From IMG/VR virus record IMGVR_UViG_3300032236_001850, positions 186,001 through 250,000 of that record: a stretch of DNA of 64,000 bases; one strand, written 5' to 3'. The translations under genes and the position numbers were made by a program. Shown here one piece after another: positions 27,600 through 40,035 of the stretch (position 1 is the first letter of the stretch; every line of letters begins with the position of its first letter). The notes beneath the pieces are model-generated. The model did not search any database. It was not told where the DNA came from and saw nothing but the letters and a program-made list of their open reading frames with translations.

Positions 27600-27698
27600 A
27601 AAAATCAAAAATAATTTTTTTTATTCGAAACTTTTTCCTAAATTTGCATAAAATATTAAAATCAACTAGATATATAAATCTATAATTTAAAAAACTCA

Positions 27699-27827
27699 AT
27701 GAAAACAACTTTCAGAAATATTGTAAAACCGTTTATGCCGCAGAGCGTTGCACCCTTTAATCAGGTGGGCATTGCCAAATGGTATAATGGGTACAGCAAG
27801 GGATCTGGAGGTCACAATATAATTTAA
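27699..27827 (+). CDS. leader peptide 1 (42 aa; not in ORF track)
   Basis: MKTTFRNIVKPFMPQSVAPFNQVGIAKWYNGYSKGSGGHNII between promoter and terminator. Confidence 0.75.
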   Translation: MKTTFRNIVKPFMPQSVAPFNQVGIAKWYNGYSKGSGGHNII

Positions 27828-27897
27828 TGTAAAGCACTAGTCAAATAAGCATTAAATATTTTTACTCCAGATCCTAAAAGATCTGGAGTTTTTTTTT
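27801..27897 (+). terminator. attenuator 1: terminator 27864-27897 with antiterminator strand 27801-27810
   Basis: ACTCCAGATC/GATCTGGAGT plus T run; GGATCTGGAG is a perfect complement of CTCCAGATCC. Confidence 0.8.
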
Positions 27898-27918
27898 GAA
27901 TTAGAAACAATAAAAAAA

Positions 27919-27991
27919 CTGGGTGTGGCGCAGTTGATAGCGCGGTTGCTTTGGGAGCAACAGGTCGTCGGTTTGAGTCCGGCCACCCAGA
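27919..27991 (+). tRNA. tRNA-Pro(TGG)
   Basis: Cloverleaf; atypical D loop and T loop (TTTGAGT). Confidence 0.8.
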
Positions 27992-28071
27992 AATGATCAA
28001 AAAGGAATGCTTCCACGTAGCGATCATTGGTAACATCCGAAAGGATGGCTAGATTCCTTATTAATAGAATT

Positions 28072-28911
28072 ATGAAAGAAATAGATATAATATTAAAATC
28101 CGGTTCAATGGGGGATGCAAGTCTATCCATATATGGTTATTGCAACACTGTGACAACTAGAAAAATCAGAAAGATATTAAATGACAATAATGTATCGGAA
28201 GAAATTTTTATAAAAAATGATAGTAAAAGAAATATAATAACCAAAAAATGCCCGTCATGCGGAAATGAATTTAAAACTAGAGCTGATAAAAAGGAAAGAA
28301 CTTGTTGCAGTATAGCATGTGCAAATTCACATAAACCAAAAAGAATTAAGGACCCATATTTAGTAGGAAAAAAGTCGGAGATAAAAACAGTAAGGAAACA
28401 AATAATTAAAAAAATAGATAGAAAATGTCAACTCTGCGATTCTGACTATATAGGTTCAAAAAAATCTAAATTTTGTTCAGCTATATGTAGAAACCAGCAT
28501 CAATCGGAAACAATGAAATTGAATATTAAAAATGGGATATGCAAGGGTTGGCAATCAAGGAACATAGAGAGCTATCCCGAGAAATTTTTTAAGACTGTAT
28601 TATCAAATAATAACATAGATTTTATATTAAATCATCCAGTTTCAAAAAAATCATTAGGAGTCGATAGCAATGCATATTATTTTATCGATTTTTATATAGT
28701 AAAGGACGGAAAAAATATAGACCTAGAGATTGATGGCAAACAACATAAACTTTTAGATCGTAGAGATAGTGACACTGAAAGAGATATGCTTTTGAATAAT
28801 AATGGATATTTAGTATATAGAATCGAATGGAATGACATAAATTCAAAAGCTGGCAAAATAAGAATAGAAGAAAAAATAAATAACTTCTTAATATTCTATA
28901 ATAAATTATAA
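28072..28911 (+). CDS. free-standing endonuclease, DUF559/Vsr-like, with zinc fingers
   Basis: CxxC...CSxxC repeats; YFIDF, LEIDGKQH, D..RD..L...GY.V.RI.W. Confidence 0.8.
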   Translation: MKEIDIILKSGSMGDASLSIYGYCNTVTTRKIRKILNDNNVSEEIFIKNDSKRNIITKKCPSCGNEFKTRADKKERTCCSIACANSHKPKRIKDPYLVGKKSEIKTVRKQIIKKIDRKCQLCDSDYIGSKKSKFCSAICRNQHQSETMKLNIKNGICKGWQSRNIESYPEKFFKTVLSNNNIDFILNHPVSKKSLGVDSNAYYFIDFYIVKDGKNIDLEIDGKQHKLLDRRDSDTERDMLLNNNGYLVYRIEWNDINSKAGKIRIEEKINNFLIFYNKL

Positions 28912-28916
28912 ATGAA

Positions 28917-29144
28917 ATGGCAACAATAAAAGAAATCGTAAAAGACAACAAAGTTAGATTCTCACATCTAAAGAATGACATCGCTTATTACAATGTTTTT
29001 ATTGAAGGAGCGGATCACACATTTCCAGTTAGACTGAATGATATAGGTGAAGCAACTTTGTTAGCTGAAGATAATGCCATCTTCTTTATGAGATACATTA
29101 GAAAGGCTTTAGAGAACAACGAGTTCCATAAGGCATCTAGGTAA
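28917..29144 (+). CDS. hypothetical phage protein
   Basis: FPV...DIG.AT......AIFFMRYIRK. Confidence 0.75.
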   Translation: MATIKEIVKDNKVRFSHLKNDIAYYNVFIEGADHTFPVRLNDIGEATLLAEDNAIFFMRYIRKALENNEFHKASR

Positions 29145-29148
29145 ACAT

Positions 29149-29219
29149 ACGGGCTTGGTGCAATGGTAGCATACCGGTCTCCAAAACCGACGATGAAGGT
29201 TCGAATCCTTCAGTCCGTG
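29149..29219 (+). tRNA. tRNA-Trp(CCA)
   Basis: Cloverleaf; loop CTCCAAA. Confidence 0.93.
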
Positions 29220-29228
29220 CAAATTTAA

Positions 29229-29299
29229 TGGGATATGGTGTAACGGTAACACAACTGGTTTTGGTCCAGTTATTCCAGGTTCGAATCCTGGTATCCCAA
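29229..29299 (+). tRNA. tRNA-Gln(TTG)
   Basis: Cloverleaf; loop TTTTGGT. Confidence 0.93.
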
Positions 29300-29475
29300 C
29301 AAATAAAATTAAAAAATTATCAAAAAATATTTTTTTAATTCGAAAGCATTTCATACATTTGCGATGCAGATAAAGAAGGATCTTTGACATAATGGAAACT
29401 AAATCAATACGATAAAGTGGAAAAGTTTTAATAAACCAGACAGGTTTATTAAACAAAATGAGCTTTATCATTACT

Positions 29476-29549
29476 GACCTCGTAGCTCAGCTGGCTAGAG
29501 CACCTCACTTTTAATGAGGGAGTCATGGGTTCGAGTCCCATCGGGGTCA
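29476..29549 (+). tRNA. tRNA-Lys(TTT)
   Basis: Cloverleaf; loop CTTTTAA. Confidence 0.95.
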
Positions 29550-29554
29550 CAATA

Positions 29555-29632
29555 GGGATATTGGCACAGCGGCGACTGCACCTGACTGTAAATCAGGCAT
29601 ACCACACGGAGGTTCGAGTCCTCCATATCCCA
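29555..29632 (+). tRNA. tRNA-Tyr(GTA)
   Basis: Cloverleaf; loop CTGTAAA. Confidence 0.9.
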
Positions 29633-29728
29633 CTAAAAATAACCAAACCAAAATGAAAAAGATATTAGACTTTTTATTTGGCTATCTTCCTAAGAATGAT
29701 AGCAACAACATTCTAATGTAAAACAAAC

Positions 29729-29839
29729 GGAGTAAAAGGGCTGGGAAATGCCTGATAGGGTCTGCTTCAGATTCTAGATAGCAAGAGTAAGACTATTAGT
29801 GCTTATCCCAGATAGCGTGGTTCAATTCCAGCTACTCCA
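29729..29839 (+). ncRNA. tRNA-like RNA with a long helix replacing the D and anticodon arms
   Basis: GGAGTA/TACTCC-A; T loop TTCAATT; CTGGGA/TCCCAG; CTGATAG/CTATTAG. Confidence 0.6.
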
Positions 29840-29845
29840 CAACAT

Positions 29846-29919
29846 TCTTCTGTAGCTCCAACGGTCAGAGCGAAGGTTTGTTAAACCTGGGGTTGCTGGT
29901 TCGAATCCAGCCAGAAGAG
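29846..29919 (+). tRNA. tRNA-Asn(GTT)
   Basis: Cloverleaf; loop TTGTTAA; G73. Confidence 0.9.
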
Positions 29920-29930
29920 CAAATTAAAAA

Positions 29931-30003
29931 GGTGCGGTAGCTCAGTTGGTAGAGCACTAGACTGAAAATCTAGGTGTCGCCGGTTCGATCCCGGCCCGTA
30001 CCA
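29931..30003 (+). tRNA. tRNA-Phe(GAA)
   Basis: Cloverleaf; loop CTGAAAA. Confidence 0.95.
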
Positions 30004-30181
30004 CAAACAAAATAGCTATGTACACAAAAAAAGTTAAAGTTGTTATTTACTTCGATACAACATATGAAAGAGCAGAGTATATCTATGTTGACGAAGGAAC
30101 TTCCAAGGAAGATATAACTAAAATGATAAATGAAAAATTCGAGGATTGGTTCTGTTGGGATTCCTTTCCTGGATTATAAAA

Positions 30182-30253
30182 GGGTGGATAGCTCAGCGGT
30201 AGAGCAGCGCACTGTTAATGCGCTGGTCGTGGGTTCGAATCCCACTCTGCCCT
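30182..30253 (+). tRNA. tRNA with GTT (Asn) anticodon and U73
   Basis: Cloverleaf; loop CTGTTAA. Confidence 0.88.
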
Positions 30254-30256
30254 CTA

Positions 30257-30340
30257 GGGTGCCTGGTCAAGCCTCTTACTTCATTGTAACGTAACCAGTG
30301 GGTATAGAGCTAACACGTAATAGTTAGCTCGACGCTACCC
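30257..30340 (+). ncRNA. unidentified structured RNA
   Basis: GGGTG/TACCC closing stem, CTGGT/ACCAG, GAGCTAAC/GTTAGCTC. Confidence 0.45.
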
Positions 30341-30360
30341 AAAAATTTAAAATTATATTG

Positions 30361-31062
30361 ATGGAGGAATCAATTTGCGAAAAATGTTTAAAAGAGCATA
30401 ACGGTAAATATGGAAGCGGAAGATTCTGCTCTTCCTCGTGTTCCAGATCTTTTTCTAGCGTGAAAAATAGGAATGAAACAAACAGAAAAATATCAGAAAA
30501 ACTTAAAATCAATGGTAATGGGGGTATGGTTACGATTGATTGTATATACTGTAACAAAAAATTTACCACCAGAAGACGAGGAAACAGGAATCAAAGATAT
30601 TGCTCAAATTCGTGTTCATCCAGAGATATTTCGGATCTGTCCAGATTGAAAATTTCTGAAAAAATGAAAGTAATAAATAAAGGTGAAAAAAATCCAATGT
30701 TTGGAATATCACCAAAAAATACAAGTAGTGTACAAGCTATCTCTGATAAACACAACGGAGATCCTATATTTAATGTAAGATCCACATATGAAAGAGAATA
30801 TGTGAGATTGCTTAATGATAAAGATTCCGTTCTGTATTTCGTGTATGAGCCAAAAAAATATAGATGTGAATATGAGTTGGAAGGGGTTAGAAGAACCTAT
30901 CAACCTGATTTTTATGTTAAGGAGATTGATATTGAATATGTAACTGAGGTAAAAGCATTATGGCAATTAGAAACAAACGAAACATTAGCAAAGAAGGATG
31001 GATTCATTAGAAAATTCACAATACCATATAAAATATGGACAAAAGAAAACAAGCGGAAGTAG
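30361..31062 (+). CDS. free-standing PD-(D/E)XK (TnsA-like) endonuclease
   Basis: HNG.YGSGRFCS..C, NUMOD3-like GEKNPMFG, YQPDF...EVK. Confidence 0.8.
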   Translation: MEESICEKCLKEHNGKYGSGRFCSSSCSRSFSSVKNRNETNRKISEKLKINGNGGMVTIDCIYCNKKFTTRRRGNRNQRYCSNSCSSRDISDLSRLKISEKMKVINKGEKNPMFGISPKNTSSVQAISDKHNGDPIFNVRSTYEREYVRLLNDKDSVLYFVYEPKKYRCEYELEGVRRTYQPDFYVKEIDIEYVTEVKALWQLETNETLAKKDGFIRKFTIPYKIWTKENKRK

Positions 31063-31125
31063 CTCAATTGGTAGAGCTCCTGCCTTCCAAGCAGGGGGTT
31101 GCCGGATCGTACCCGGTCTTCCGCT
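31053..31125 (+). tRNA. tRNA-Gly(TCC)
   Basis: Cloverleaf; T loop ATCGTAC; overlaps the endonuclease stop codon. Confidence 0.9.
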
Positions 31126-31139
31126 CAAAAATTAAACAG

Positions 31140-31427
31140 ATGTCTAAAGTAGTAAACGTCAAGACCGACCAATATGATGTTTATATAGGAAGACCATCAA
31201 AATGGGGTAATCCATATTCACATAAGGAAGGCACATTAGCAGAGTTTAAAGTTGCTTCGAGAAAAGAAGCAATTGATAAGTATGAGGAATATCTTCTTCA
31301 GAACAACGAGCTAATGGATTCGCTACACGAGATTAAAGGAAAAACTCTAGGATGTTGGTGTAAACCAAAAAGATGTCACGGAGAAATATTAGTAAAATAT
31401 GCTAATAAAGGAAACAAGTTATTTTAA
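31140..31427 (+). CDS. DUF4326 family protein
   Basis: YIGRPSKWGNPY, GKTLGCWCKP..CHG. Confidence 0.88.
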   Translation: MSKVVNVKTDQYDVYIGRPSKWGNPYSHKEGTLAEFKVASRKEAIDKYEEYLLQNNELMDSLHEIKGKTLGCWCKPKRCHGEILVKYANKGNKLF

Positions 31428-31494
31428 AAATATAATAGAACAAATGAAAGCAATCACAGACAGCTCGTAGACCATAATTGTTAGATAAGCAATT

Positions 31495-31728
31495 ATGACT
31501 CAGAAATTGAGAATTTGGAGAGTAGTTCCTACCAGTAAGACTGGTGTTCAGGCTCCCACTTTTTTCGTAGAGACTACGGAAGAAGGACGCGAGAAGGCAG
31601 AGCAATCTGCAACTAAACAAGCAAGACAAAGATCTGGCTTGGGTTCATTTGAAAACTGGAACTTTAACATCACTAAGATGGAAGTTAGAGTTGATAGATT
31701 TGGCAGATACGTCAAACATCACCAGTAA
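31495..31728 (+). CDS. hypothetical protein
   Basis: ORF inside tRNA array. Confidence 0.7.
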   Translation: MTQKLRIWRVVPTSKTGVQAPTFFVETTEEGREKAEQSATKQARQRSGLGSFENWNFNITKMEVRVDRFGRYVKHHQ

Positions 31729-31770
31729 CAGTGATTGTTTTCATAGGTTCAATTTAAAAACCTATGAATT

Positions 31771-31844
31771 GGCGGGGTAGCTCAGATGGTAGTAGCGTTG
31801 GAGTCATAACCCAAAGGTCAGCGGTTCGATCCCGCTCCCCGCTA
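31771..31844 (+). tRNA. tRNA-Met(CAT)
   Basis: Cloverleaf; loop GTCATAA. Confidence 0.88.
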
Positions 31845-31852
31845 CAAAATTT

Positions 31853-31925
31853 GGGGCTGTAGCTCAACTGGCTGAGCGCCTCCCTTGCACGGAGGAGGAT
31901 GTGGGTTCGAATCCCATCAGCTCCA
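31853..31925 (+). tRNA. tRNA-Ala(TGC)
   Basis: Cloverleaf; G3:U70. Confidence 0.95.
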
Positions 31926-31988
31926 CAAAATATTTTTAATAATGAAAAAGAAATTCGACATGTATTAGGTAAAATAACCTAATACAAC

Positions 31989-32219
31989 ATGAAAACAAAA
32001 AAGAGATGGTCTTGGACCGAAGCACAAAGAAGACGCCACACAAAAGGCAGATATCATTATTGGAATAACGTTCCTGCTGACTTCGTTAGACAATTTAACA
32101 AAGCAAACAGAACAAAAGAAAAAGTATCAATGCATGAATTCATCAGAGGTGGAGATCTAGATTTCATAGATTTCACACCAAAGTATTCTAAGAGATGCGC
32201 AGGGTGGATTTATTTTTAA
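31989..32219 (+). CDS. basic hypothetical protein
   Basis: ORF inside tRNA array. Confidence 0.65.
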   Translation: MKTKKRWSWTEAQRRRHTKGRYHYWNNVPADFVRQFNKANRTKEKVSMHEFIRGGDLDFIDFTPKYSKRCAGWIYF

Positions 32220-32229
32220 AATAAGAAAG

Positions 32230-32799
32230 ATGGCAAGAAAAAAAGAAGAAACAGGTTTAAAATTTTATGAGATATCACAAAACAATAGTGGAGGTTCGTT
32301 TATAACGAATGACAAACTATGTCACAGATTATTCATAGAAGCAAACAGCTCAAGCGAAGCAGATTCTATCGCTGAAGATCTTGGATGTTATTGGAACGGT
32401 GTTGATGAAGATATGGACTGTCCGTGTTGCGGAGATCGTTGGTACGGTTCACATTCTGTTGATATAACTTCTATGACAAAAGAAAAAGACAGCAGATATC
32501 CGGTTGAAAGATGGGTTAATGCAAAAGGTCTTAGTGCTGAAGATGAATTGAAAGTATTGCTTGAGCGATATTCAGGAATGGAATGGATTGAAGCTCCATC
32601 GATAAATGAAAAATACGGATCTCGAATAATTGAGGGATCTATTAAACTTAATAGCATAGAAGATTATGTACAGGTAGTTGCTGATCAGTATGGTTGGACC
32701 TATCCGGATGCTAGAATATTCTACTATGACGGAAGGGTAAAAGAGATATTCTCGTCCAATGTGGAAGCACCCAAGAAAAAGAAAAATAAAATAGTCTGA
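32230..32799 (+). CDS. conserved phage protein
   Basis: QNNSGG and DCPCCGDRW. Confidence 0.75.
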   Translation: MARKKEETGLKFYEISQNNSGGSFITNDKLCHRLFIEANSSSEADSIAEDLGCYWNGVDEDMDCPCCGDRWYGSHSVDITSMTKEKDSRYPVERWVNAKGLSAEDELKVLLERYSGMEWIEAPSINEKYGSRIIEGSIKLNSIEDYVQVVADQYGWTYPDARIFYYDGRVKEIFSSNVEAPKKKKNKIV

Positions 32800-32816
32800 T
32801 AGAGATATCAGCAACT

Positions 32817-32891
32817 GGTTCATTAACTCAGTTGGTTCAGAGTGCAACTCCTACAAAGTTGAAGTCATAGGTTCGAATCCTATATGAACTA
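32817..32891 (+). tRNA. tRNA-Val(TAC)
   Basis: Cloverleaf; loop CCTACAA (C33). Confidence 0.85.
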
Positions 32892-32942
32892 CAAGCACAC
32901 AGAAAAGAGAAGGTTCGAAGATATATAGAATAAAAATTAAAA

Positions 32943-33623
32943 ATGTATATTTGCGAAAAATGTAATTCCAATCACAATGGCGAATATGGCTCGGGAAGAT
33001 TTTGTTCACCGAAGTGCAGCAGATCATATAGCACATCATTAAATAGAATATCAATTAATGAAAAAATAGGCAAAGCTATAAAAGGGTCGGGTAATCCACC
33101 ATCCATAAAAAATTGCATATATTGTGGAAATGAATTCATAGCTTCGTGGAAAAGAAAAGATCAAAAAAGCTGTTCAATGTCTTGTTCTATGAAATCCAAT
33201 TGGGAGAATCCTGAATATAAAAAAAATATTACGGAAAAAAATAAAGCAAGATGCATTGATATAAACGAGAGGAACCGGATGAGGGATATTGGTAGAAAGG
33301 GGGGATTTGGGAAAAAAGGTACAACAGAGGGTGGTACCAGATATGATTCAAATCTAGAAAAAATTTGTTTTGAATATCTTGAATCAAAAAATATCAAATT
33401 CGAAGCTCATAAAAATATACCTAATTCATCTAAGATTAGCGATGTATATTTAATAGACCAGAATATCTGGATCGAATTGGATGGAATAAACAGAGAAAAA
33501 AGAAAAGACTGGCTAGGAAAGGATTACGAATACTGGTTAGAAAAAATAATCATATACAAAAGAGAATCCTTAGATATGCGAATAGCATACAATTTGGGTG
33601 ATTTAATTAGGATAATAGAATGA
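32943..33623 (+). CDS. free-standing PD-(D/E)XK endonuclease
   Basis: N-terminus paralogous to 30361; S.LE, SD.Y, WIELDG. Confidence 0.8.
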   Translation: MYICEKCNSNHNGEYGSGRFCSPKCSRSYSTSLNRISINEKIGKAIKGSGNPPSIKNCIYCGNEFIASWKRKDQKSCSMSCSMKSNWENPEYKKNITEKNKARCIDINERNRMRDIGRKGGFGKKGTTEGGTRYDSNLEKICFEYLESKNIKFEAHKNIPNSSKISDVYLIDQNIWIELDGINREKRKDWLGKDYEYWLEKIIIYKRESLDMRIAYNLGDLIRIIE

Positions 33624-33815
33624 GATCCAATTAGTTCGAAAGAGCAAAAAAGGAGGAATAAGATGAACAGACGAAAGTCATCACCAAAGGGTAGAAAATA
33701 GATGTTATTCTGAGTATGGAGCGACGGCTCTAGGAAGGTTCGATTCCTTCACATCACATTTCAAGAGTATGGATAAATGGTGTTAGTAGCGGTCTAAAGT
33801 CTGAATTGGATCTCA
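33621..33815 (+). ncRNA. unidentified ~195-nt structured RNA with T-arm-like hairpin
   Basis: 12-bp closing stem TGAGATCCAATT/AATTGGATCTCA; GAAA tetraloops; GAAGG-TTCGATT-CCTTC. Confidence 0.6.
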
Positions 33816-33905
33816 ATAGGAAATGAAGCTCACAAAGCCCCTCATTTGTAGATCAATTTCGAGCATTTTTGAGCTTAAAGTTGGGTCCACTGTGAGCTTC
33901 AAATT

Positions 33906-33995
33906 GATCGGGTAATATAATGGCAGTATAGGTCGGGGGTCTTACGTGAGTAAGTGGCCTCTGGTCGTGCACAGGTTCGACTCCTGTTCTGATCA
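33906..33995 (+). ncRNA. tRNA-like RNA with extended, GNRA-capped anticodon arm
   Basis: Acceptor, D and T arms present; anticodon loop replaced by TTAC-GTGA-GTAA. Confidence 0.7.
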
Positions 33996-34016
33996 CTAAT
34001 TTTTAAACATTTCGAA

Positions 34017-34406
34017 ATGGACAAGGAAAGATTGGAATCATTAGCTAATAGATTATTGGAGATTCCTGCAAAGGTTGTAGAAGCGCAGTTGGAGTTATTG
34101 ACATTAACTGAAACTTCACAATCCCAATCAGAGAGGATCACTCAGATTGAATCTGTAATTAAAACAGAAATAAGTGCTGCTGTTGACGGAGCTGGTAAAA
34201 AAGCTTATAGCAACGCAGAAGCAAGAGATGCTGCTTTTATTGAAAAGACTACAGATAATTACGAATTATCCGTTGCTAAAACAGATCTTGCTAAAACACA
34301 AAGATCTGTACAGGAGAAAAGAATCAAAATAGAAGCTCTCGGAAACGAACAAAGAAATATAAGAGCAGTTCTTTATTTCATAGGAGGCGGAGAAGGAGCA
34401 ATCTAA
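34017..34406 (+). CDS. coiled-coil hypothetical protein
   Basis: Heptad pattern; YSNAEARDA. Confidence 0.75.
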   Translation: MDKERLESLANRLLEIPAKVVEAQLELLTLTETSQSQSERITQIESVIKTEISAAVDGAGKKAYSNAEARDAAFIEKTTDNYELSVAKTDLAKTQRSVQEKRIKIEALGNEQRNIRAVLYFIGGGEGAI

Positions 34407-34469
34407 GAATTTGTCACCAAGGGTCGGCCCATTGGGGGTGATTAAGAAATACCCATAAACCCCGGCCAC

Positions 34470-34538
34470 GGGATAAAAGCACAAGCGGATGTGCAATCGC
34501 TAAACAGCGAGAGGCAGGGTTCGAGTCCCAATATTCCA
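34470..34538 (+). pseudogene. tRNA-like RNA with collapsed anticodon loop
   Basis: D arm GCAC/GTGC; TCGCT-AAAC-AGCGA; T loop TTCGAGT. Confidence 0.55.
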
Positions 34539-34553
34539 CTAAAAATTGAAAAC

Positions 34554-35027
34554 ATGACACTAAAGGATAAAATCAATGCTGATTATATTACAGCATTCAA
34601 GGCAAAAGACACTGTAGCAAAAAGTGCATTAAGTGGTTTAAAGTCAAAAATTCTAGAAGCTGAGAAATCTGGACCTGCTGGTACAGAGCTTAGTGATGCA
34701 GATGTTTTAAAGATTGTCATAAGCACAATTAAACAAAGAAAACAATCGGTTGAGGAATTTACAAAGGCAGGTAGAATGGATCTTGTTGAACAGGAAACAT
34801 TAGAGCTAGCACCAATTGAAGCTTATCTTCCTAAACAAATGGACGATTCTGAAATCACTTCAGCAGTGAAGGAACTTATAGCTGAGTTTGATGGAGCAAA
34901 CCTTAATATACAAGCTCTTACAGGTAAAGTTATTGGTGCTTTCAATAAAAAGTTTCCAGGTATGGCAAGTCCAGTTAAAGTGAAAGAAATTATTACAGAA
35001 AATATTGTTGAAAAAATTATAAATTAA
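34554..35027 (+). CDS. yqeY: GatB/YqeY domain protein
   Basis: LKDKI..D...A.KAKD, IKQRK.S.E.F.KAGR.DL...E..E...IE.YLPKQM. Confidence 0.9.
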   Translation: MTLKDKINADYITAFKAKDTVAKSALSGLKSKILEAEKSGPAGTELSDADVLKIVISTIKQRKQSVEEFTKAGRMDLVEQETLELAPIEAYLPKQMDDSEITSAVKELIAEFDGANLNIQALTGKVIGAFNKKFPGMASPVKVKEIITENIVEKIIN

Positions 35028-35086
35028 TTTTTTTATTCCGAAAGGATGCCATATATTTGCATCATAATAATTAAACACATTTAAAA

Positions 35087-35260
35087 ATGGCAACAACCCA
35101 AAGAAGATCTAGACAAGCAAGAGCATTGTCTATGTTGGAGGCACAATTGAAAAGCGGTGTTAAAACCGAAAAAGGTACAAGAGATACCAAAATTGCATTA
35201 ACAGACTCTGACGTCAAGAGATTGAATAAAGAGATCGCTATATTGCAATCTAGGTTATAA
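35087..35260 (+). CDS. small basic protein (not in ORF track)
   Basis: 57-aa ORF directly after a TATATTTG promoter. Confidence 0.65.
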   Translation: MATTQRRSRQARALSMLEAQLKSGVKTEKGTRDTKIALTDSDVKRLNKEIAILQSRL

Positions 35261-35264
35261 TAAG

Positions 35265-35431
35265 TTAATTCTCTGTGTGTCCGTAGAGGCGAATTTCCAA
35301 AGTGTAACCTAATACGTGAGAAAGGAAGGCGGTATCTAAGTGCTGATTAGCTGCAACTGAGTCTATAGGGCGATTCAGCGAAAGGGGAAACACATTTATT
35401 GCTACTTGTAGATGGAGGCACGGAGAATTAA
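35265..35431 (+). ncRNA. unidentified ~165-nt structured RNA
   Basis: Closing stem TTAATTCTCTGTGT/GCACGGAGAATTAA with G-U pairs; internal CTGAGTC/GATTCAG. Confidence 0.6.
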
Positions 35432-35435
35432 ATAA

Positions 35436-35509
35436 GGTCCCGTAGTTCAGCGGAAGAATTCCAGAATACGGATCTGGAGACGGGGGTTCGAATCCCTCCG
35501 GGATCTCCA
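35436..35509 (+). tRNA. tRNA-Arg(ACG)
   Basis: Cloverleaf; encoded CCA. Confidence 0.9.
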
Positions 35510-35516
35510 AAAAATA

Positions 35517-35590
35517 CGGTAGGTAGCTCAGTTGGTTAGAGCGTCTCGCTGATACCGAGAAGGCCGGAGGTTCAAGTCCTCCTCTACCGA
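35517..35590 (+). tRNA. tRNA-Ile(GAT)
   Basis: Cloverleaf; loop CTGATAC. Confidence 0.92.
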
Positions 35591-35594
35591 CAAA

Positions 35595-35759
35595 AACGTT
35601 CTTAGAAATATTGGTTAGTGGTAAATTGAAAGGTTACTTCGTTTTTTAGCCCAGTTGGTAGGGCGTAAATTTTTGGTATTTAAGGTCGTGGGTTCAACTC
35701 CCACAAAAACTATTAGCTCCCTTTCTAAATATTCCCTTCCCAATATCTCTAAGCACGTT
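35595..35759 (+). ncRNA. Y-RNA-like unit 1 (colinear tRNA module, TTG loop)
   Basis: AGTGGT..GTTACTTCG..ATTCCCT scaffold enclosing D, anticodon and T arms; near TROVE gene. Confidence 0.75.
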
Positions 35760-35849
35760 AAATTTTAAAAAAATATTGATTTTTTTATGAAACAAAGAGG
35801 ATTTCCTCACATATAAAGATCACAAAACGTTCATTGAAAAGATAATTTA

Positions 35850-35984
35850 TTGTAAGTGGTAACGGAATATGAGTTACTTCGTTTTTTAGCTCATTTGGTA
35901 GAGCAAGAGTCTCTTAAACTTTAGGTAGCTGGTTCAACTCCGGCAAAAACATCCATTGAAACTCACCCGGACATTCCCTTACAA
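35850..35984 (+). ncRNA. Y-RNA-like unit 2 (colinear tRNA module, CTT loop)
   Basis: Same scaffold; TTGTAAG/CTTACAA terminal stem. Confidence 0.8.
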
Positions 35985-35990
35985 AACATA

Positions 35991-36149
35991 TTATAAGTGG
36001 TCAGTAAAATAGTTACTTCGCATGCATTGAAAGCACGGTGTCGGTGGTTCGAATCCATCTTCCCCCACTAAACAAATTAAAAATTTGGGGGAATAGCTCA
36101 GTTGGTAGAGCACGTTAGAAAAAACGCTATTTACATCATTCCCTTATAA
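35991..36149 (+). ncRNA. Y-RNA-like unit 3 (circularly permuted, YrlA-like)
   Basis: T arm, then loop-closed acceptor TTCCCCC/GGGGGAA, then D arm. Confidence 0.8.
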
Positions 36150-36308: not shown

Positions 36309-36346
36309 AAAGGGATTAGGACGCCAAGCGACTTAATCCCTTTTTT
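36309..36346 (+). terminator. intrinsic terminator after the Y-RNA array
   Basis: GGGATTAGG/CTTAATCCC plus T run. Confidence 0.75.
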
Positions 36347-36393
36347 ATTAGAGTAAATTTAAAAGTAAAATATAAAAACAAAAATTAGAAATT

Positions 36394-37317
36394 ATGAAAA
36401 GAAATTCATTAGCATCAAAAGGATTATCAATGTCTCAAGCTCAATCTGTATCAAATCTTTGCAACCAAAGATCTAAAGATATTACTGCAGCTTTAGCAGA
36501 CATCAACAACGCATCAAAAACGATAAGAATCTCCAAGGAGGATCATCAGTTAACTGCTGCAAAACCTTTGCCTGAGAATGTTGTTGAACTTCTTAAGAAT
36601 AAGGCAAGGTTGCATGCAACACAGGCTTTCCTAATGGAGAACATAAAAGCCAAGGACGAATTAATAAACTCGATCAAAAGAGAATATTTTGATTACGAGG
36701 ATCAAAATCCAGCTCCCACAAGAGAGCCTAATGTTCAACCTGAAGTTCTTGTTCAAGTTGGTGAGGATTGGGGTTGGGAACAACTCTCAATGGACGAGTA
36801 TAATGAATTCATTGAGGCTGAGGCTTATGCTTCACACATAGGTCAATTTATTCATAAAGGTGGAACATTAGATCGTCTGAGAGCTGAGCTACCAAAAATC
36901 CAGCTTCTTGAGTTCATGGAGGTTGAGATTGGAAAGAAAACTCCCGTTAAAGTCAACGTGCACCACAAGTCTGAGGAGCTGTTAAAAACTCATGAGGAGT
37001 TGGCAGCTCTTCATAGAGGTTACGAACAAAGAGTTAACTACTTCAAATCTAAGGTTAAGAATGCTGTAACCAAGGAGAACGCAAGGATTTCTAAAATTAA
37101 TGCTGACGCACAGGCAGAAGCTAACGAAAAGAATGCTCTTGTGATGAACGAGTATTCAAAAAAGAAAGAAACCTGGTTAGCAGATTACAAGAAAGCAAGT
37201 CTTGATTTTGAGACTGAGCGTCAAAATAGAATCAGCGAAGCTGTAAATCTTAAGATCCAGGTGGATGCTAGATTCCAACCAGTTGTTGATGAATTTTTGA
37301 AACAACTAGAAAAATAA
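36394..37317 (+). CDS. coiled-coil protein of unknown function
   Basis: 307 aa, helical; lies between the Y-like RNAs and the large ncRNA. Confidence 0.85.
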   Translation: MKRNSLASKGLSMSQAQSVSNLCNQRSKDITAALADINNASKTIRISKEDHQLTAAKPLPENVVELLKNKARLHATQAFLMENIKAKDELINSIKREYFDYEDQNPAPTREPNVQPEVLVQVGEDWGWEQLSMDEYNEFIEAEAYASHIGQFIHKGGTLDRLRAELPKIQLLEFMEVEIGKKTPVKVNVHHKSEELLKTHEELAALHRGYEQRVNYFKSKVKNAVTKENARISKINADAQAEANEKNALVMNEYSKKKETWLADYKKASLDFETERQNRISEAVNLKIQVDARFQPVVDEFLKQLEK

Positions 37318-37321
37318 AAAT

Positions 37322-37701
37322 AAATTGAGGTGCTGAAGGGGTAAGCACAAGCCGATTCCCCCGATGCTTTGATTCGGAGAGATAAGGTCCTTTAATTAAT
37401 GGCGTCAAGCCATTATCTTATAAGATAAATGACTATTAATCATATACAGCAATCAGAGGTTCCTTCGGGAGCCTCTATAACTCCGCTTCTTCTATAAAAT
37501 TAAACAAAACTGAGATAGAACTCAATTGTTAGACAAGTTACTGAAAGCCATAGAGAAAGAGAAATCTTTACCACTAGGCAGATAATTGGCTAACTACAGA
37601 GACTTAGTTTTTGTCCTTGCCTTTGCGATAGAGGAAGGTCTTTGACATTGATCTTGCATTTGACGTGGTCTATATGCTTTATCTTTCCGATAACTCAATT
37701 T
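37322..37701 (+). ncRNA. ~380-nt multi-branched structured RNA
   Basis: Nested long-range helices with G-U pairs; cUUCGg hairpin; no ORF of 60 aa or more. Confidence 0.7.
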
Positions 37702-37731
37702 TAAAATATTAACGAATAAACAATTATAATC

Positions 37732-39312
37732 ATGTCACGTTACAACCAAAAAGTAAAAAGAACTGTAGAGACAGTTACAAACCACCAAGGTGGTACAGGT
37801 GTGAAGTATGATCCAAAATTGGAATTAATTGCGATTCTTACTACTGGATTAGACAATTCATACTATGAAAAATTATCGGATAGAGAGAACAGATTTGTTC
37901 AACTTATTGACGAATTATCTAAGAAAGATATCGAATTCGTCGCGAAAGCGCTCGTATACGCGAGAACTGTTGTTGGTCAAAGATCAGTAACACACTTCGG
38001 TTCGGTGTCATTAGTTAAGCATTTATCAGGTTCTGCTATAGGTAGAAGATTCTTCTCTAAAAGAGATAAGAATGCTAAAACCGGAGGTATTGTATACCGT
38101 TTAGATGACGTATTAGAGATCATCGCAGCTTACCAACACTTCAATCCAGGTAAACCATTACCTAACTCGATGAAGAAAGGTTTCAAAGCAGCTTTGGAAT
38201 CAGCTGATGCGTACGAATTAGCTAAATATCAAGGTAAAGGTAAAGCAGTTTCGCTTGTAGATGTTGTTAACTTGGTTCGTCCAAAACCAACAACACCACA
38301 AATGGAAGGTGTTTTCAAAGATCTTATGACTGGTAAATTAAAACAGTTCAACACGGTTGAGGATAAAAACTCAAAAGCTGGACAAGATGTTGCTGCAAAA
38401 GTTAAATCTGGAGAAATCACTAAAGCACAAGCTGAGATTGAATTGACACAGTCTAAAGAAAGCAACTATGCTGAATTGATTAAAACAAGAAAAATTGGTT
38501 ACTTGGCATTGCTTCGTAACTTAAGAAACATCATCAACACGAGTTCAAACTCTGAATTGGTTAGCGGTGCATGTGAACTTTTAATCGATGAAAAATTGAT
38601 CAGAAAATCTTTGGTTTTCCCTCACCAAATCGATATTGCTTTGGAGATTCTTTTACAAGAAACTAGTGCTTCTGCATCCAGACCATTCGTTACAGCTTTA
38701 AATAAAGCCTACGAATTAGCAATACCAAACTTGGTTGAATTGTTCTCACACGGTAGAACAGCGGTTGTTATAGATACATCTGGATCTATGCACGGAATGG
38801 GTCACGGTGTTAAAATGAATGGTAAAGCTATCAATAAACACTGTATCGATAAGGCTGCTCTTATTGGAGCAACTTTAGCAAAAGGTATTGGTGCTGATTT
38901 ATATCAATTTGCAACAACAACTGAGAGTATTAGATACAACCCAGGTGATAGTATAAACACTATCAAAAACACATGTTTAAGCTTACAAGGTAGAGTTGGA
39001 CACGGTACGGACTTCGGTTCAATCTTCTCAACTTTACAGTCAAGTGGTAAATATGATCGTATCTTTATCATATCGGATTTACAAGGAGGTGATAGAATCG
39101 TTACAAACAGTTCTTTCCAATCCTATAAATCTAAGCATGGTGAACCGTTCATCTACACGGTAGATATTCAAGGATATGGTACAACCATGTTCAAACCAGG
39201 TAACAAATTAGTTCAACTTTTTGGTTACTCTGCTGATATCTACGAGATGATCAAAAAAGCTGAGATTGATCCAAAAGCAATTTTGAGAGAAATTGAAGCT
39301 ATCGTGATCTAA
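37732..39312 (+). CDS. Ro60/TROVE domain RNA-binding protein with vWA domain
   Basis: LAKYQG....VSL.DV..LV.PKP, ALLRNLRNI, DTSGSM MIDAS, GTD, IISD.Q. Confidence 0.93.
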   Translation: MSRYNQKVKRTVETVTNHQGGTGVKYDPKLELIAILTTGLDNSYYEKLSDRENRFVQLIDELSKKDIEFVAKALVYARTVVGQRSVTHFGSVSLVKHLSGSAIGRRFFSKRDKNAKTGGIVYRLDDVLEIIAAYQHFNPGKPLPNSMKKGFKAALESADAYELAKYQGKGKAVSLVDVVNLVRPKPTTPQMEGVFKDLMTGKLKQFNTVEDKNSKAGQDVAAKVKSGEITKAQAEIELTQSKESNYAELIKTRKIGYLALLRNLRNIINTSSNSELVSGACELLIDEKLIRKSLVFPHQIDIALEILLQETSASASRPFVTALNKAYELAIPNLVELFSHGRTAVVIDTSGSMHGMGHGVKMNGKAINKHCIDKAALIGATLAKGIGADLYQFATTTESIRYNPGDSINTIKNTCLSLQGRVGHGTDFGSIFSTLQSSGKYDRIFIISDLQGGDRIVTNSSFQSYKSKHGEPFIYTVDIQGYGTTMFKPGNKLVQLFGYSADIYEMIKKAEIDPKAILREIEAIVI

Positions 39313-39405
39313 TAAATCACCGTAAACAAAAAAGCCATTCGAAAGAATGGCTTTTTTTATTGTTATGGGAAATGATATATACAATAAAAAAATCAAATCA
39401 GTAAT

Positions 39406-39759
39406 ATGATACATCTATATGAATTCGAAAAATTCAATGAAAGTTTAAACATTGAAAATTACTGTCAAACATATCTTAAAGATTCGGGGTTTGATCATAG
39501 AATACTAAATAAAAATATTTTCATAACTCGTGGGGAAGGTAAACCTAAATTTACTTACGATGAAATTAAAAAACATCTTAGACCACTAGTTACATTTTTG
39601 GATAGAGATATGGGTGTAAAGGAAATAATTCTTAAGGAGAGTCCATCCAATAGAACCAGCAGAACAACAAGACACAGATGCACGGTTAAGGAATTCATGG
39701 GTGATACTAACACTGCAGCGAAATGCGAGCATTTAAGAGAAGTTGAAATAATTTTGTAA
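39406..39759 (+). CDS. putative virion protein
   Basis: MIHLYEFEKFNES; GATATATA upstream. Confidence 0.7.
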   Translation: MIHLYEFEKFNESLNIENYCQTYLKDSGFDHRILNKNIFITRGEGKPKFTYDEIKKHLRPLVTFLDRDMGVKEIILKESPSNRTSRTTRHRCTVKEFMGDTNTAAKCEHLREVEIIL

Positions 39760-39855
39760 TTTTTTCAAAAATATTTTTTTTATTCGAAACATTTCCTTAA
39801 ATTTGCATAAAATATTAAAATCAATTAGATATATAAATCTATAAAAATAAAAATC

Positions 39856-39948
39856 ATGTCACAAATACAGTACATATTAGATACATTACATTTAGATCAC
39901 ACAAGTTCAACTTGTGAATCGTCTATTGTGATGAGGAGAGAGTATTGA
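39856..39948 (+). CDS. leader peptide 2 (30 aa; not in ORF track)
   Basis: MSQIQYILDTLHLDHTSSTCESSIVMRREY between promoter and terminator. Confidence 0.75.
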   Translation: MSQIQYILDTLHLDHTSSTCESSIVMRREY

Positions 39949-40004
39949 TATTAAGTAACGTAATAAATATCAAAAAGGTCTCCTCGAAAAAGGAGGCCTT
40001 TTTT
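39933..40004 (+). terminator. attenuator 2: terminator 39972-40004 with antiterminator strand 39933-39939
   Basis: AGGTCTCCT/AGGAGGCCT plus T run; GAGGAGA is complementary to TCTCCTC. Confidence 0.78.
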
Positions 40005-40035
40005 ATTGTTCATTGAAATATTGTAAAAGTAAATT

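What the first reader, a model, noticed from the sequence alone, without database searches (positions are those of the whole stretch)
27601..40010. Two leader-peptide attenuators whose codons match their own downstream tRNA arrays: a candidate tRNA-depletion sensor
Seen: both main tRNA arrays start with a near-identical ~75-bp promoter block (27605-27685 and 39765-39844; TAAATTTG plus GATATATA), then a short unannotated ORF, then an intrinsic terminator just before the first tRNA. In each case the 3' end of the ORF can pair with the 5' arm of the terminator. Array 1 encodes Pro, Trp, Gln, Lys, Tyr, Asn, Phe, Gly, Met, Ala, Val, Arg, Ile; 36 of 42 residues of leader 1 are from this set, and it has no Leu, Asp, Glu or Cys. 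Array 2 encodes Ser x3, Thr, Cys, His, Leu, Asp x2, Ile2, Glu, fMet; 22 of 30 codons of leader 2 match, and it has no Pro, Trp, Lys, Asn, Phe, Gly or Ala. Established: ribosome-mediated attenuation in trp, his and ilv operons. Inference: stalling on any depleted tRNA (for example after host anticodon nuclease activity) frees the antiterminator and induces the array that supplies the missing tRNA. I do not know of a described multi-tRNA attenuator for phage tRNA arrays. Caveat: internal promoters near 29330, 35027 and 42055 may partly uncouple distal tRNAs.
Basis: partly seen in the sequence, partly recalled or inferred. Interest (0 to 1): 0.95.

Follow-up and report, generated by a model that had tools for sequence, protein, structure and literature searches.

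The report
Leader-peptide attenuators controlling phage tRNA arrays
Each of this huge phage's two tRNA gene arrays sits behind a promoter, a tiny translated reading frame and a transcription terminator arranged like the classic trp attenuator, and the tiny frame is written almost only in codons read by the tRNAs downstream, so the phage probably makes more tRNA when ribosomes run short of those tRNAs; this control has not been described for tRNA genes.

Summary
Both arrays start with a 93%-identical promoter/5'UTR block, a short ORF (42 and 30 aa), an intrinsic terminator, and the first tRNA 20-30 nt later.

Relatives turn it into a strong case. I recovered about 50 leader-1 variants and 6 leader-2 types from a clade of 340-435 kb uncultured phages.
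- The ORFs are kept in frame.
- Their cores evolve under amino-acid-level selection.
- Their last codons are conserved as RNA, even in different reading frames. These codons pair with the terminator's 5' arm, and also with N-terminal codons. This gives a 1:2 / 2:3 / 3:4 attenuator.
- Codons where a stalled ribosome would leave the antiterminator free are 94% (leader 1) and 82% (leader 2) cognate to the downstream array. Later codons are at background.
- Leader-1 cores almost never contain Leu, Asp, Glu, His or Cys (2 of 1508 residues).
- Leu codon use in leader 2 follows which Leu tRNAs the array holds.

Two other huge phages (LR756501, LR756500) carry three leaders with different sequences built the same way. 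One is a Leu leader before five Leu tRNAs.

Everything is in silico. The trigger (anticodon nucleases versus simple supply and demand) is open. I found no prior description.

The parts
27605..27685 (+). Promoter/5'UTR block 1. It contains a T-run plus TTCGAAA (27616-27631), the -7-type box TAAATTTG (27639-27646), a GATATATAA box (27669-27677) and the small hairpin TAGAT..ATCTA (27667-27682).
   Evidence: 68/73 identical to block 2. Member of promoter family D2/D5. GATATATAA occurs 12 times in the window against 2 expected, mostly 3-30 nt upstream of ORF starts.
27699..27827 (+). Leader 1 ORF, 42 aa (MKTTFRNIVKPFMPQSVAPFNQVGIAKWYNGYSKGSGGHNII). The sensor core is codons 2-31.
   Evidence: About 50 unique homologues of 40-45 aa were found. 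Indels keep the frame. In the core, third codon positions vary 2.7 times more than positions 1 and 2. The core is 94% array-1 amino acids, with L/D/E/H/C at 2 of 1508 residues.
27707..27717 (+). Segment 1 (AACTTTCAGAA, codons 4-7). It pairs with segment 2 as the anti-antiterminator.
   Evidence: The best partner of segment 2 lies at the same ORF position in all lineages. Codon 6 is mostly AGA where segment 2 has TCTGG and GGA where it has TCCGG; L047 is an exception. RNAalifold predicts a long-range helix with compensatory pairs.
27800..27811 (+). Segment 2 (GGGATCTGGAGG, codons 35-38). This is the antiterminator strand and a copy of the terminator's 3' arm.
   Evidence: Duplex with the 5' arm is -15.1 kcal/mol against -5.7 +/- 2.0 for shuffles. 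The nucleotide motif is conserved across lineages in different reading frames.
27864..27897 (+). Intrinsic terminator 1 (segments 3 and 4 plus T9).
   Evidence: Found by the terminator scan. The stem is 100% paired in 16 variants, 3 pairs covary, and 0 of 500 shuffles reach the observed score.
27919..35955 (+). tRNA array 1: Pro, Trp, Gln, Lys, Tyr, Asn, Phe, Asn, Gly, Met, Ala, Val, Arg(ACG), Ile, Gln, Lys(CTT). Inserted ORFs lie between the tRNAs (endonuclease-like, YqeY-like and others).
   Evidence: There is no room for a promoter between the T-run and tRNA-Pro (21 nt).
29307..29374 (+). Internal promoter of the same family. Further copies lie at 35005-35072 and 42032-42099.
   Evidence: These internal promoters are present only in the window's lineage.
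39765..39844 (+). Promoter/5'UTR block 2 (TAAATTTG at 39798-39805; GATATATAA at 39828-39836).
39856..39948 (+). Leader 2 ORF, 30 aa (MSQIQYILDTLHLDHTSSTCESSIVMRREY). The sensor core is codons 7-23. Segment 2, TGAGGAGA, lies at 39932-39939.
   Evidence: The peptide is identical in 6 phages, with 4 synonymous and 0 non-synonymous changes. Six diverged types all have cores built only from S, T, L, C, H, D, E and (ATA) Ile. Segment 2 forms 7-8 of 8 pairs with the terminator 5' arm in every lineage, and three positions are compensatory.
39972..40004 (+). Intrinsic terminator 2 (core stem GGTCTCCT / AGGAGGCC at 39977-39998, then a T-run).
40036..42985 (+). tRNA array 2: Ser(TGA), Ser(GGA)-like, Thr, Cys, His, Leu(TAA), Ser(GCT), Asp, a CAT tRNA (Ile2-like), Glu, Asp, a CAT tRNA (initiator-like).
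   Evidence: A terminator-like hairpin follows at 42986-43019.

Best explanation
Each array is a single transcription unit gated by a ribosome-mediated transcription attenuator of the trp/his/leu type.

Proposed mechanism:
- A strong host-type promoter starts a transcript whose first roughly 130 nt (leader 1) or 95 nt (leader 2) encode a short peptide.
- The last codons of the ORF (segment 2) can pair with the N-terminal codons (segment 1) or with the 5' arm of the terminator (segment 3).
- If the ribosome runs through to the tail or stop codon, it covers segment 2. If the leader is not translated, 1:2 forms. In both cases the 3:4 hairpin forms and transcription stops 20-30 nt before the first tRNA.
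- If the ribosome stalls anywhere in the core, segment 2 is free. It captures segment 3 as that emerges, and RNA polymerase reads into the array.
- The core is written almost only in codons read by the tRNAs encoded downstream. The leader therefore acts as an OR gate over a dozen (array 1) or eight (array 2) tRNA species. Shortage of any of them raises transcription of the array that supplies it, and abundance shuts it down. This is negative feedback, a demand-driven tRNA supply.

Shown by sequence and comparison: the anatomy, its conservation, the alternative pairings, amino-acid-level selection on the core, RNA-level selection on the tail, and the codon-to-array correspondence.

Inferred: that the ORFs are translated, that stalling causes read-through, and what causes the shortage (codon demand of the AT-rich phage, loss of host tRNAs, or host tRNA-cleaving defences).
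For: 1. Architecture. A promoter, sORF and terminator are followed by the first tRNA 11-30 nt after the T-run in every lineage. Most lineages have no other promoter inside the arrays, so the tRNAs can only be made by read-through.

2. Translation.
- The ORF is kept in about 50 variants with frame-preserving indels.
- A +1/-1 pair of indels in the tail restores the stop position.
- Third codon positions vary 2.7 times more than positions 1 and 2.
- Invariant P, Q, G, A and K columns use several synonymous codons.
- Leader 2 shows 4 synonymous and 0 non-synonymous changes, while the spacer after the stop varies.

3. Alternative structures.
- The tail:5'-arm duplex lies at -27 to -9 nt from the stop in all leader-1 lineages (-9 to -17.6 kcal/mol; p <= 0.02 in most; the L025 group is weak).
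- The same holds in leader 2 (-12 to -14 in types c-f).
- The motif ATC[C/T]GGA is read in different frames (RSGY against NPDM).
- Register tables show 7-10 of 10 pairs (leader 1) and 7-8 of 8 pairs (leader 2). Leader 2 has three compensatory positions between types, and own-lineage pairing exceeds cross-lineage pairing.
- The 1:2 helix is found by RNAalifold with compensatory pairs, and codon 6 A/G mostly follows segment-2 U/C.
- The terminator stem covaries (0/500 shuffles).

4. Geometry.
- With a ribosome-footprint mask, the window's leader 1 switches from antiterminator to terminator between A-site codons 30 and 32. That is exactly where the conserved core ends.
- Codons from which a stall leaves segment 2 free are in-set at 312/331 (leader 1) and 107/131 (leader 2). 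Occluding codons are in-set at 78/115 and 20/44, which is background.

5. Specificity.
- The window's permutation tests give a joint p of 2.5e-5.
- Leader-1 cores exclude L/D/E/H/C (2 of 1508 residues, against 25% in the tails), although I, V, M and F interchange freely.
- Leu codons follow the arrays. An array with only Leu(TAA) has a leader with only TTA. Arrays with Leu(TAA) and Leu(TAG) have leaders with TTR and CTN. An array with no Leu tRNA (checked with Rfam) has no Leu in the leader core.

6. Independent replication with leaders of different sequence.
- LR756501: the run SKHSKHFSSSSKWF precedes Trp, His, His, Phe, Lys, Ser.
- LR756501: a leader with 7 Leu using all six Leu codons precedes five Leu tRNAs, and its tail copies the terminator's 3' arm.
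- LR756500: VHIIHIWEHLLEEV precedes His, Glu, Val, Trp, Leu.
- Binomial p values are 7e-4, 5e-4 and 7e-3.
Against: - There is no experimental or transcriptomic evidence, and the host is uncultured and unknown.
- At thermodynamic equilibrium the terminator wins in all variants except the window's leader 1. A kinetic argument is therefore needed, as it is for trp.
- The formal shuffle control for the 2:3 helix of leader 1 is not significant: one compensatory pair, with 74/500 and 140/500 shuffles reaching the observed values. Part of the reason is that one lineage is out of register in the alignment.
- The window's leader-2 antiterminator is only 7-8 bp.
- The codon match is not perfect:
  - Ser and Thr make up 5.7% of leader-1 cores.
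  - The N-terminal codons of each leader contain residues of the other set. These codons double as segment 1.
  - R6 = AGA is read by Arg(TCT) of the unattenuated upstream array.
  - With strict wobble rules only 29/42 and 21/30 codons are read by the leader's own array.
- By ARAGORN alone, L023 lacks Ala and Met tRNAs and L047 lacks an Ile tRNA. L051 lacks Ser(GCT), which Rfam also failed to find. All three leaders keep those codons.
- The order of residues in the leader-1 core is more conserved than a pure codon counter needs. An invariant inner helix (TTATGCC / GGTATAA) explains part of this, but a peptide-specific role is not excluded.
- The window's lineage has internal promoters that uncouple the distal tRNAs.
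- No such unit was found in four cultured tRNA-rich phages.
Confidence: 0.72

Rival explanations
1. The element is a generic translation-coupled attenuator. The leader only reports whether ribosomes are translating at all (overall translational capacity), and the resemblance between leader composition and array content has no function.
For: The 1:2 / 2:3 / 3:4 anatomy would work with any codons. Some array tRNAs are not mirrored in the leaders, and the reverse also occurs.
Against: - The composition match is significant in the window.
- The match is restricted to the stall-competent codons.
- It is maintained by avoiding Leu, Asp, Glu, His and Cys over about 50 variants.
- It recurs with different amino-acid sets in three leaders of different sequence.
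Confidence: 0.1
2. The short ORFs are ordinary small phage genes (functional peptides) with their own terminators. The tRNAs downstream are made by constitutive leakage through those terminators.
For: The leader-1 core sequence is highly conserved, with 18 invariant residues in the five-sequence alignment. JGI annotates several homologues as hypothetical proteins.
Against: - The C-terminal tails are conserved as nucleotides across different reading frames and follow the terminator arm.
- Leader 2 conserves its composition but hardly its sequence.
- The alphabet of each peptide equals the tRNA set downstream, and this also holds in other phages.
- No Pfam annotation is recorded for any homologue, and there is no homologue in GenBank phages.
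Confidence: 0.06
3. The leader is an untranslated structured RNA (riboswitch-like, T-box-like or protein-binding) that senses something directly, and the ORF is incidental.
For: The leaders are significantly structured: z = -4.3 and -4.4. They contain an invariant inner helix.
Against: - No Rfam family, including T-box, matches at E < 0.1.
- Third-position variation, frame-preserving indels and restoration of the stop position all point to translation.
- Leader 2 varies strongly in sequence but keeps its ORF and its amino-acid alphabet.
Confidence: 0.05
4. The leaders work through nascent-peptide arrest, as TnaC, SecM and Erm leaders do. The conserved leader-1 peptide would stall the ribosome in response to a small molecule or factor, not to tRNA supply.
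For: The order of residues in the leader-1 core (FMPQ..PF.QVGIAKWYNG) is conserved beyond what codon counting needs.
Against: - Leader 2 and the three leaders in LR756500 and LR756501 share no sequence motif, only the match to their arrays.
- Variable core positions of leader 1 still stay within the array-1 alphabet.
Confidence: 0.05

Closest known systems
Ribosome-mediated transcription attenuators of amino-acid biosynthesis operons (trpL, hisL, leuL, thrL, ilvL, pheL)
   Same: - A short leader ORF lies between the promoter and the first gene, followed by an intrinsic terminator.
- Segments 1:2, 2:3 and 3:4 pair in mutually exclusive ways.
- Regulatory codons lie upstream of segment 2.
- The terminator is more stable than the antiterminator, so the decision is kinetic.
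- thrL and ilvL already sense two or three amino acids.
   Different: - The regulated genes are tRNAs, not enzymes.
- The regulatory codons are not a run of one codon but roughly one or a few of each of 8-13 amino acids.
- Segment 1 lies at the very start of the ORF and segment 2 at its end, so the whole ORF body is the sensor.
- The element is phage-encoded and sits behind a TAnnTTTG-type promoter (the Bacteroidota assignment of that type is from my own knowledge).
- The Leu leader of LR756501 is the closest formal analogue of leuL.
pheM leader of the pheST operon (attenuation of an aminoacyl-tRNA synthetase gene)
   Same: A leader peptide with cognate codons controls a component of the translation apparatus by attenuation.
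   Different: It controls a synthetase rather than tRNA genes, senses a single amino acid, and is cellular.
T-box riboswitches
   Same: They sense tRNA status and switch a terminator/antiterminator in front of translation-related genes.
   Different: A T-box binds uncharged tRNA directly, without a ribosome or an ORF. No T-box match is found here.
Phage tRNAs as counter-defence or as replacement of host tRNAs (PMC10264068, PMC11555353, PMC11464382; titles and abstracts as listed, papers not read)
   Same: These papers give a rationale for phages to resupply tRNAs that the host's tRNA-cleaving defences deplete.
   Different: Their titles and abstracts concern the tRNAs themselves. None of my literature searches turned up a sensor that controls tRNA transcription.

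Membership tests
Ribosome-mediated transcription attenuator (trp/his/leu type) | A short ORF lies in the transcribed leader between the promoter and the first regulated gene. | tested here: met
   ORFs 27699-27827 and 39856-39948 lie directly behind promoter blocks. They are conserved in all lineages.
Ribosome-mediated transcription attenuator (trp/his/leu type) | An intrinsic terminator lies upstream of the first regulated gene. | tested here: met
   Terminators at 27864-27897 and 39972-40004. The stem covaries. The first tRNA lies 11-30 nt after the T-run, and most lineages have no promoter in between.
Ribosome-mediated transcription attenuator (trp/his/leu type) | An antiterminator (2:3) excludes the terminator and has one strand within ribosome reach of the ORF. 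| tested here: met
   The tail:5'-arm duplex is found in all lineages of both leaders. Compensatory changes are clear in leader 2. Leader 1 has a single compensatory pair, and its formal shuffle control is not significant.
Ribosome-mediated transcription attenuator (trp/his/leu type) | An anti-antiterminator (1:2) makes untranslated leaders terminate. | tested here: inconclusive
   Leader 1 has a helix between codons 4-7 and segment 2, with mostly A-U/G-C covariation. Leader 2 types c-f have a closing helix in the minimum-free-energy fold, but it is not above shuffles. The window's leader 2 shows no 1:2 pairing with segment 2.
Ribosome-mediated transcription attenuator (trp/his/leu type) | Regulatory codons are cognate to what the operon supplies and are placed so that a stall frees segment 2. 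| tested here: met
   with replication in other phages. What is supplied here is tRNA, not an amino acid.
Ribosome-mediated transcription attenuator (trp/his/leu type) | Read-through depends on translation of the leader and rises on stalling. | not testable with these tools
   This needs reporters, Term-seq, or a defined transcription-translation system.
T-box riboswitch | A specifier loop and a conserved T-box sequence are recognised by the Rfam model. | tested here: not met
   No hit at E < 0.1 in 23500-44000.
Nascent-peptide arrest leaders (TnaC, SecM, Erm) | A conserved arrest motif in the peptide is needed for stalling. | tested here: inconclusive
   The leader-1 core is conserved. Leader 2 and the leaders of other phages conserve only their composition.

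The most novel reading that the evidence does not exclude
Huge phages in general gate their tRNA arrays with 'codon-barcoded' leader peptides. Each leader would be a multi-input OR gate that detects depletion of any tRNA species encoded behind it, and it would serve as an inducible counter-measure to host tRNA-cleaving immunity (anticodon nucleases such as PrrC/RloC, retron effectors, PARIS, Schlafen-like nucleases). The division of tRNAs into arrays would then reflect which tRNAs are sensed together.
Probability: 0.3. Interest if true: 0.95.

Novelty: new variant of a known kind. Interest (0 to 1): 0.86.

Why it matters
Why phages carry tRNAs has been debated for decades (PMC10264068 abstract), and I found nothing published on how phage tRNA genes are regulated. 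This finding gives a concrete and testable control logic. tRNA transcription is tied by classical attenuation to the ribosome's own read-out of whether those same tRNAs are available.

It extends leader-peptide attenuation in two ways. The target class is new (tRNA genes). The sensor design is also new: one or a few codons each for up to 13 amino acids, instead of a run of one codon.

The elements are short (130-200 nt), modular and defined by sequence. They can be moved into reporters or a reconstituted translation system. They could also serve as natural biosensors of individual tRNA pools.

The same design occurs in at least three groups of uncultured huge phages, with different amino-acid sets, so it may be widespread and has gone unannotated.

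Tried and rejected
- GenBank phages: nucleotide searches hit only tRNAs. tblastn of leader 1 found nothing.
- One genome per bacterial/archaeal species: leader 1 occurs only on one 5-kb MAG contig, so it is not a cellular element.
- Rfam: no T-box or other cis-regulatory family matches in the leaders.
- Searches for more leader-2 relatives with protein patterns failed. The alignment was too divergent, and MKNLFH[IT] recovered only a known contig.
- MAFFT alignments of the tails put some lineages out of register by one column. This weakened the formal 2:3 covariation test. I replaced it with explicit register tables.
- Equilibrium folding with ribosome masks gave a clean switch only for the window's leader 1. 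For the other variants it shows only that segment 3 pairs upstream before segment 4 exists.
- The 1:2 pairing for the window's leader 2 was not found.
- The same detector found no unit in Xanthomonas phage RTH11, Alishewanella phage Slickus01, Vibrio phage VF16 or Agrobacterium phage OLIVR5.
- Five literature searches and a term search of the huge-phage paper found no description of attenuators for tRNA genes.
- The roughly 110-nt conserved insert between the two Ser tRNAs is not unusually structured (z = 0.1).

Full report
**What the window is**

The window is part of IMGVR_UViG_3300032236_001850, a 434-kb uncultured phage (loci L002, L009 and L017 are identical to it). It is AT-rich, about 35% GC. 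It carries at least 31 tRNA genes covering all 20 amino acids. Its promoters are repeated copies of a T-run/TTCGAAA element followed by a TAnnTTTG box. From my own knowledge this is the Bacteroidota -7 promoter type. No GenBank phage is related outside the tRNAs.

**Check of the observation**

- The two blocks 27613-27685 and 39772-39844 are 68/73 identical, and 46/47 identical downstream of TAAATTTG.
- Each block is followed by a short ORF: 27699-27827 (42 aa) and 39856-39948 (30 aa).
- Each ORF is followed by a strong terminator-like hairpin with a T-run (27864-27897 and 39972-40004).
- A tRNA follows 21 and 31 nt later.
- In leader 1 the ORF segment GGATCTGGAG is a copy of the terminator's 3' arm and pairs with its 5' arm. 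The duplex energy is -15.1 kcal/mol, against -5.7 +/- 2.0 for shuffles.
- In leader 2 the pairing is only 7-8 bp (-8.4, p about 0.09).

The composition claim holds.
- 36/42 residues of leader 1 are in the array-1 set, and 20/30 of leader 2 are in the array-2 set (22/30 counting the two ATA codons as Ile2).
- Binomial p values are 0.0012 and 0.002.
- Random windows from the phage's own proteins reach both values jointly at 2.5e-5.
- A Fisher test without Met and Ile gives 1.8e-5.
- A run of 16-18 in-set residues in leader 2 was never reached in 200,000 samples.
- Every amino acid of each array is represented in its leader.

**Relatives**

Exact-pattern and peptide-pattern scans gave relatives in viral and metagenome contigs. 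The protein collection gave 30 further clusters. Together this is about 50 unique leader-1 peptides from 340-435 kb phages. Six diverged leader-2 types were found in the same loci. Only one 5-kb MAG contig among 185,579 species genomes has leader 1, so the element is phage-specific.

In every lineage the order is the same: promoter, leader 1, terminator, an array of Phe/Pro/Lys/Ala/Trp/Gln/Ile/Asn/Gly/Met/Val/Tyr/Arg tRNAs, then promoter, leader 2, terminator, and an array of Ser/Thr/Cys/His/Leu/Asp/Glu/Met tRNAs. The first tRNA starts 11-30 nt after the T-run. Outside the window's own lineage, promoters of this family occur only in front of the two leaders. The arrays therefore depend on read-through of these terminators. 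This by itself makes the elements attenuators. The remaining question is what sets the read-through.

**Evidence that the ORFs are translated**

- Leader 1 keeps 40-45 codons.
- A 9-nt insertion (L053) and 6-nt length differences preserve the frame.
- In the tail, a +1 and a -1 indel between two lineages restore the stop position.
- In codons 12-31, third positions differ 2.7 times more often than first or second positions.
- Invariant Pro, Gln, Gly, Ala and Lys columns use two to four synonymous codons.
- Leader 2 is identical in six close relatives, with four synonymous and no non-synonymous changes. The spacer behind the stop varies.

**Evidence for the RNA switch**

- The last roughly 11 codons of leader 1 vary freely as amino acids (GSGGHNII, KNPDMIS, KRSGYGS, KPEDVIVG). 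They keep a nucleotide motif, ATC[C/T]GGA or TCGGA, that is read in different frames and is complementary to the terminator's 5' arm.
- This duplex lies at -27 to -9 nt from the stop in all lineages and follows the three terminator types (CTCCAGATC, CTCCGGATC, CTCCGATTC).
- In leader 2 the tail and arm change together at three positions: GAGGAGA/TCTCCTC, CTAAGGGA/TCCCTTAG and CCGAGGGA/TCTCTTGG. Pairing is 7-8 of 8 in every lineage, against 5-6 across groups.
- Segment 2 of leader 1 can also pair with codons 4-7. Codon 6 is mostly AGA where segment 2 has TCTGG and GGA where it has TCCGG; L047 is an exception. RNAalifold predicts this long-range helix with compensatory pairs, together with an invariant inner helix and the terminator.
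- The terminator stem covaries strongly.
- The formal shuffle test for 2:3 in leader 1 is not significant. It shows one compensatory pair, and 75.5% of cells are paired against 27-55% in slid controls. I therefore rate the 2:3 covariation as clear for leader 2 and modest for leader 1.
- A 1:2 helix for the window's leader 2 was not found.

**Geometry**

I masked a 27-nt ribosome footprint and computed pairing probabilities.
- The window's leader 1 is antiterminated for A-site codons 2-30 and terminated for codons 32-42. The boundary coincides with the end of the conserved core at G31.
- In the other variants, and in leader 2, the terminator always wins at equilibrium. Only the state before segment 4 is made shows segment 3 pairing upstream.
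- From my knowledge of the trp attenuator, the decision there is also kinetic.

I then defined stall-competent codons as those whose A-site start lies at least 12 nt upstream of segment 2.
- These codons are cognate to the array at 312/331 in leader 1 and 107/131 in leader 2.
- The remaining, occluding codons are at background, 78/115 and 20/44.

**Specificity for the downstream tRNAs**

- Among 50 leader-1 peptides, residues 2-31 are 94% in the array-1 set.
- Leu, Asp, Glu, His and Cys together occur twice in 1508 residues. In the tails of the same peptides they occur 130 times in 510.
- Variable core columns exchange I, V, M, F, N and A freely but essentially never Leu. This is hard to explain by peptide chemistry and easy to explain by selection on which tRNA is needed.
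- The window's array 2 has only Leu(TAA), and its leader uses only TTA.
- Lineages with Leu(TAA) and Leu(TAG) use both TTR and CTN codons.
- The lineage whose array 2 has no Leu tRNA (checked with Rfam) has no Leu in its leader core.

Counter-examples exist.
- Ser and Thr are tolerated in leader 1.
- R6 = AGA is read by Arg(TCT) of the upstream, unattenuated array.
- Some lineages lack an array tRNA whose codon the leader keeps.

**Independent replication**

I ran the same detector on two other uncultured huge phages in GenBank. It found three more units whose leaders differ in sequence from those here.
- LR756501, unit 1: the leader MLQTSKHSKHFSSSSKWFTTFGVETDLLCVS precedes Trp, His, His, Phe, Lys, Ser. 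Fourteen consecutive residues are in a set with background frequency 0.25. ATTCGGGGT in the ORF pairs with the terminator arm (-12.2, p = 0.008).
- LR756501, unit 2: the leader MNNILHINLLNSLCLLGIKLIG has seven Leu written with all six Leu codons. Its tail, TGATTGGG, copies the terminator's 3' arm. It precedes an array consisting only of Leu(TAG), Leu(GAG), Leu(CAA), Leu(TAA) and Leu(TAG).
- LR756500: the leader MKAISVHIIHIWEHLLEEVNINIM precedes His, Glu, Val, Trp and Leu. It sits behind a promoter of the same type as in the window.

Four cultured tRNA-rich phages showed no such unit.

**Interpretation**

The best explanation is a ribosome-mediated attenuator in which the leader's codon set is the set of tRNAs encoded downstream. 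This gives negative feedback on tRNA supply. It is also an OR-gate response to depletion of any of those tRNAs.

The neighbourhood fits an RNA-damage theme: a cyclic-phosphate-processing receiver domain, a YqeY-like protein, a TROVE/Ro60 protein with a Y-RNA-like element, and an HDV-like ribozyme hit after tRNA-Pro. This is context only. It is not evidence that host anticodon nucleases are the trigger.

**Novelty**

Five full-text searches and a term search of the huge-phage paper found no description of leader-peptide attenuation of tRNA genes. The mechanism class is classical. The target (tRNA genes), the multi-codon sensor design and the phage setting are new, so I rate it a new variant of a known kind with high interest.

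Noticed in passing
window 27992-28060 and 28027-28911: An HDV-like ribozyme hit (RF02682, 36 bits, E = 0.0016, below the gathering score) lies immediately 3' of tRNA-Pro. A DUF559/Vsr-like endonuclease ORF follows. This may be a tRNA 3'-processing ribozyme together with a homing endonuclease insertion.
   Followed up: no
window 35990-36120 and 37732-39312: Permuted tRNA-like pieces are present: a T-arm plus 3' acceptor strand, then the complementary 5' acceptor strand plus D-arm. There is a weak Rfam YrlA (Y RNA-like) hit here. A TROVE/Ro60-domain protein gene lies next to it (Pfam 2e-10). This is probably a phage Ro60/Y-RNA module.
   Followed up: partly
window 8259, 14206, 15700, 19369, 24122(-), 24712, 26651, 27669, 39828 and others: GATATATAA occurs 12 times against about 2 expected. 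Most copies lie 3-30 nt upstream of ORF starts, including both leaders. It may be a second (phage-specific?) promoter element or a translation-initiation element. A sigma-70 region-2 protein is encoded at 18389-19288(-).
   Followed up: partly
window 26212-26637, 34491-35027, 43061-43609, 30358-31062: Genes lying among the tRNAs include a cyclic-phosphate-processing receiver domain (cREC_REC, 7e-22), a YqeY-like protein (4e-32), an HNH endonuclease and a TnsA-like endonuclease. These suggest an RNA-repair theme plus homing-endonuclease insertions that spread the arrays apart in this lineage.
   Followed up: partly
window 40125-40237 (also L003, L004, L005, L036): A roughly 110-nt insert between tRNA-Ser(TGA) and the tRNA-Ser(GGA)-like gene is conserved across lineages. 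It is not unusually structured (z = 0.1) and has no Rfam match.
   Followed up: partly
L019:16259, L023:15435, L041:4082, L042:12091: Relatives carry suppressor-like tRNAs (anticodon TTA, or TCA called 'SeC') inside array 1. This hints at stop-codon recoding in some lineages.
   Followed up: no
L057 (LR756500.1, reverse strand) about 41460-41710: An ORF of about 84 aa ends with a Ser-rich tail (SENSSLNSDSSSSLLYS) a few nt before tRNA-Ser(GCT) and tRNA-Ser(TGA). No terminator was detected. It may be a different kind of coupling between cognate codons and tRNA genes.
   Followed up: no
window 1-7300: A second, dense promoter family (AACTTTAACG..TATCGTT..CTTATATTTGC..GTAATTAAAAC; about 8-13 copies) and a 38-nt repeat (ATAGTATGTTACTAAGATACTC..CACGCGAGGG) are spaced through a region of small ORFs.
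   Followed up: no
window 47807-47880: The promoter in front of a ClpB-like AAA+ gene (47854-49980) shares the TTTGCATAAAATA start of the leader blocks but has no leader ORF or terminator.
   Followed up: no
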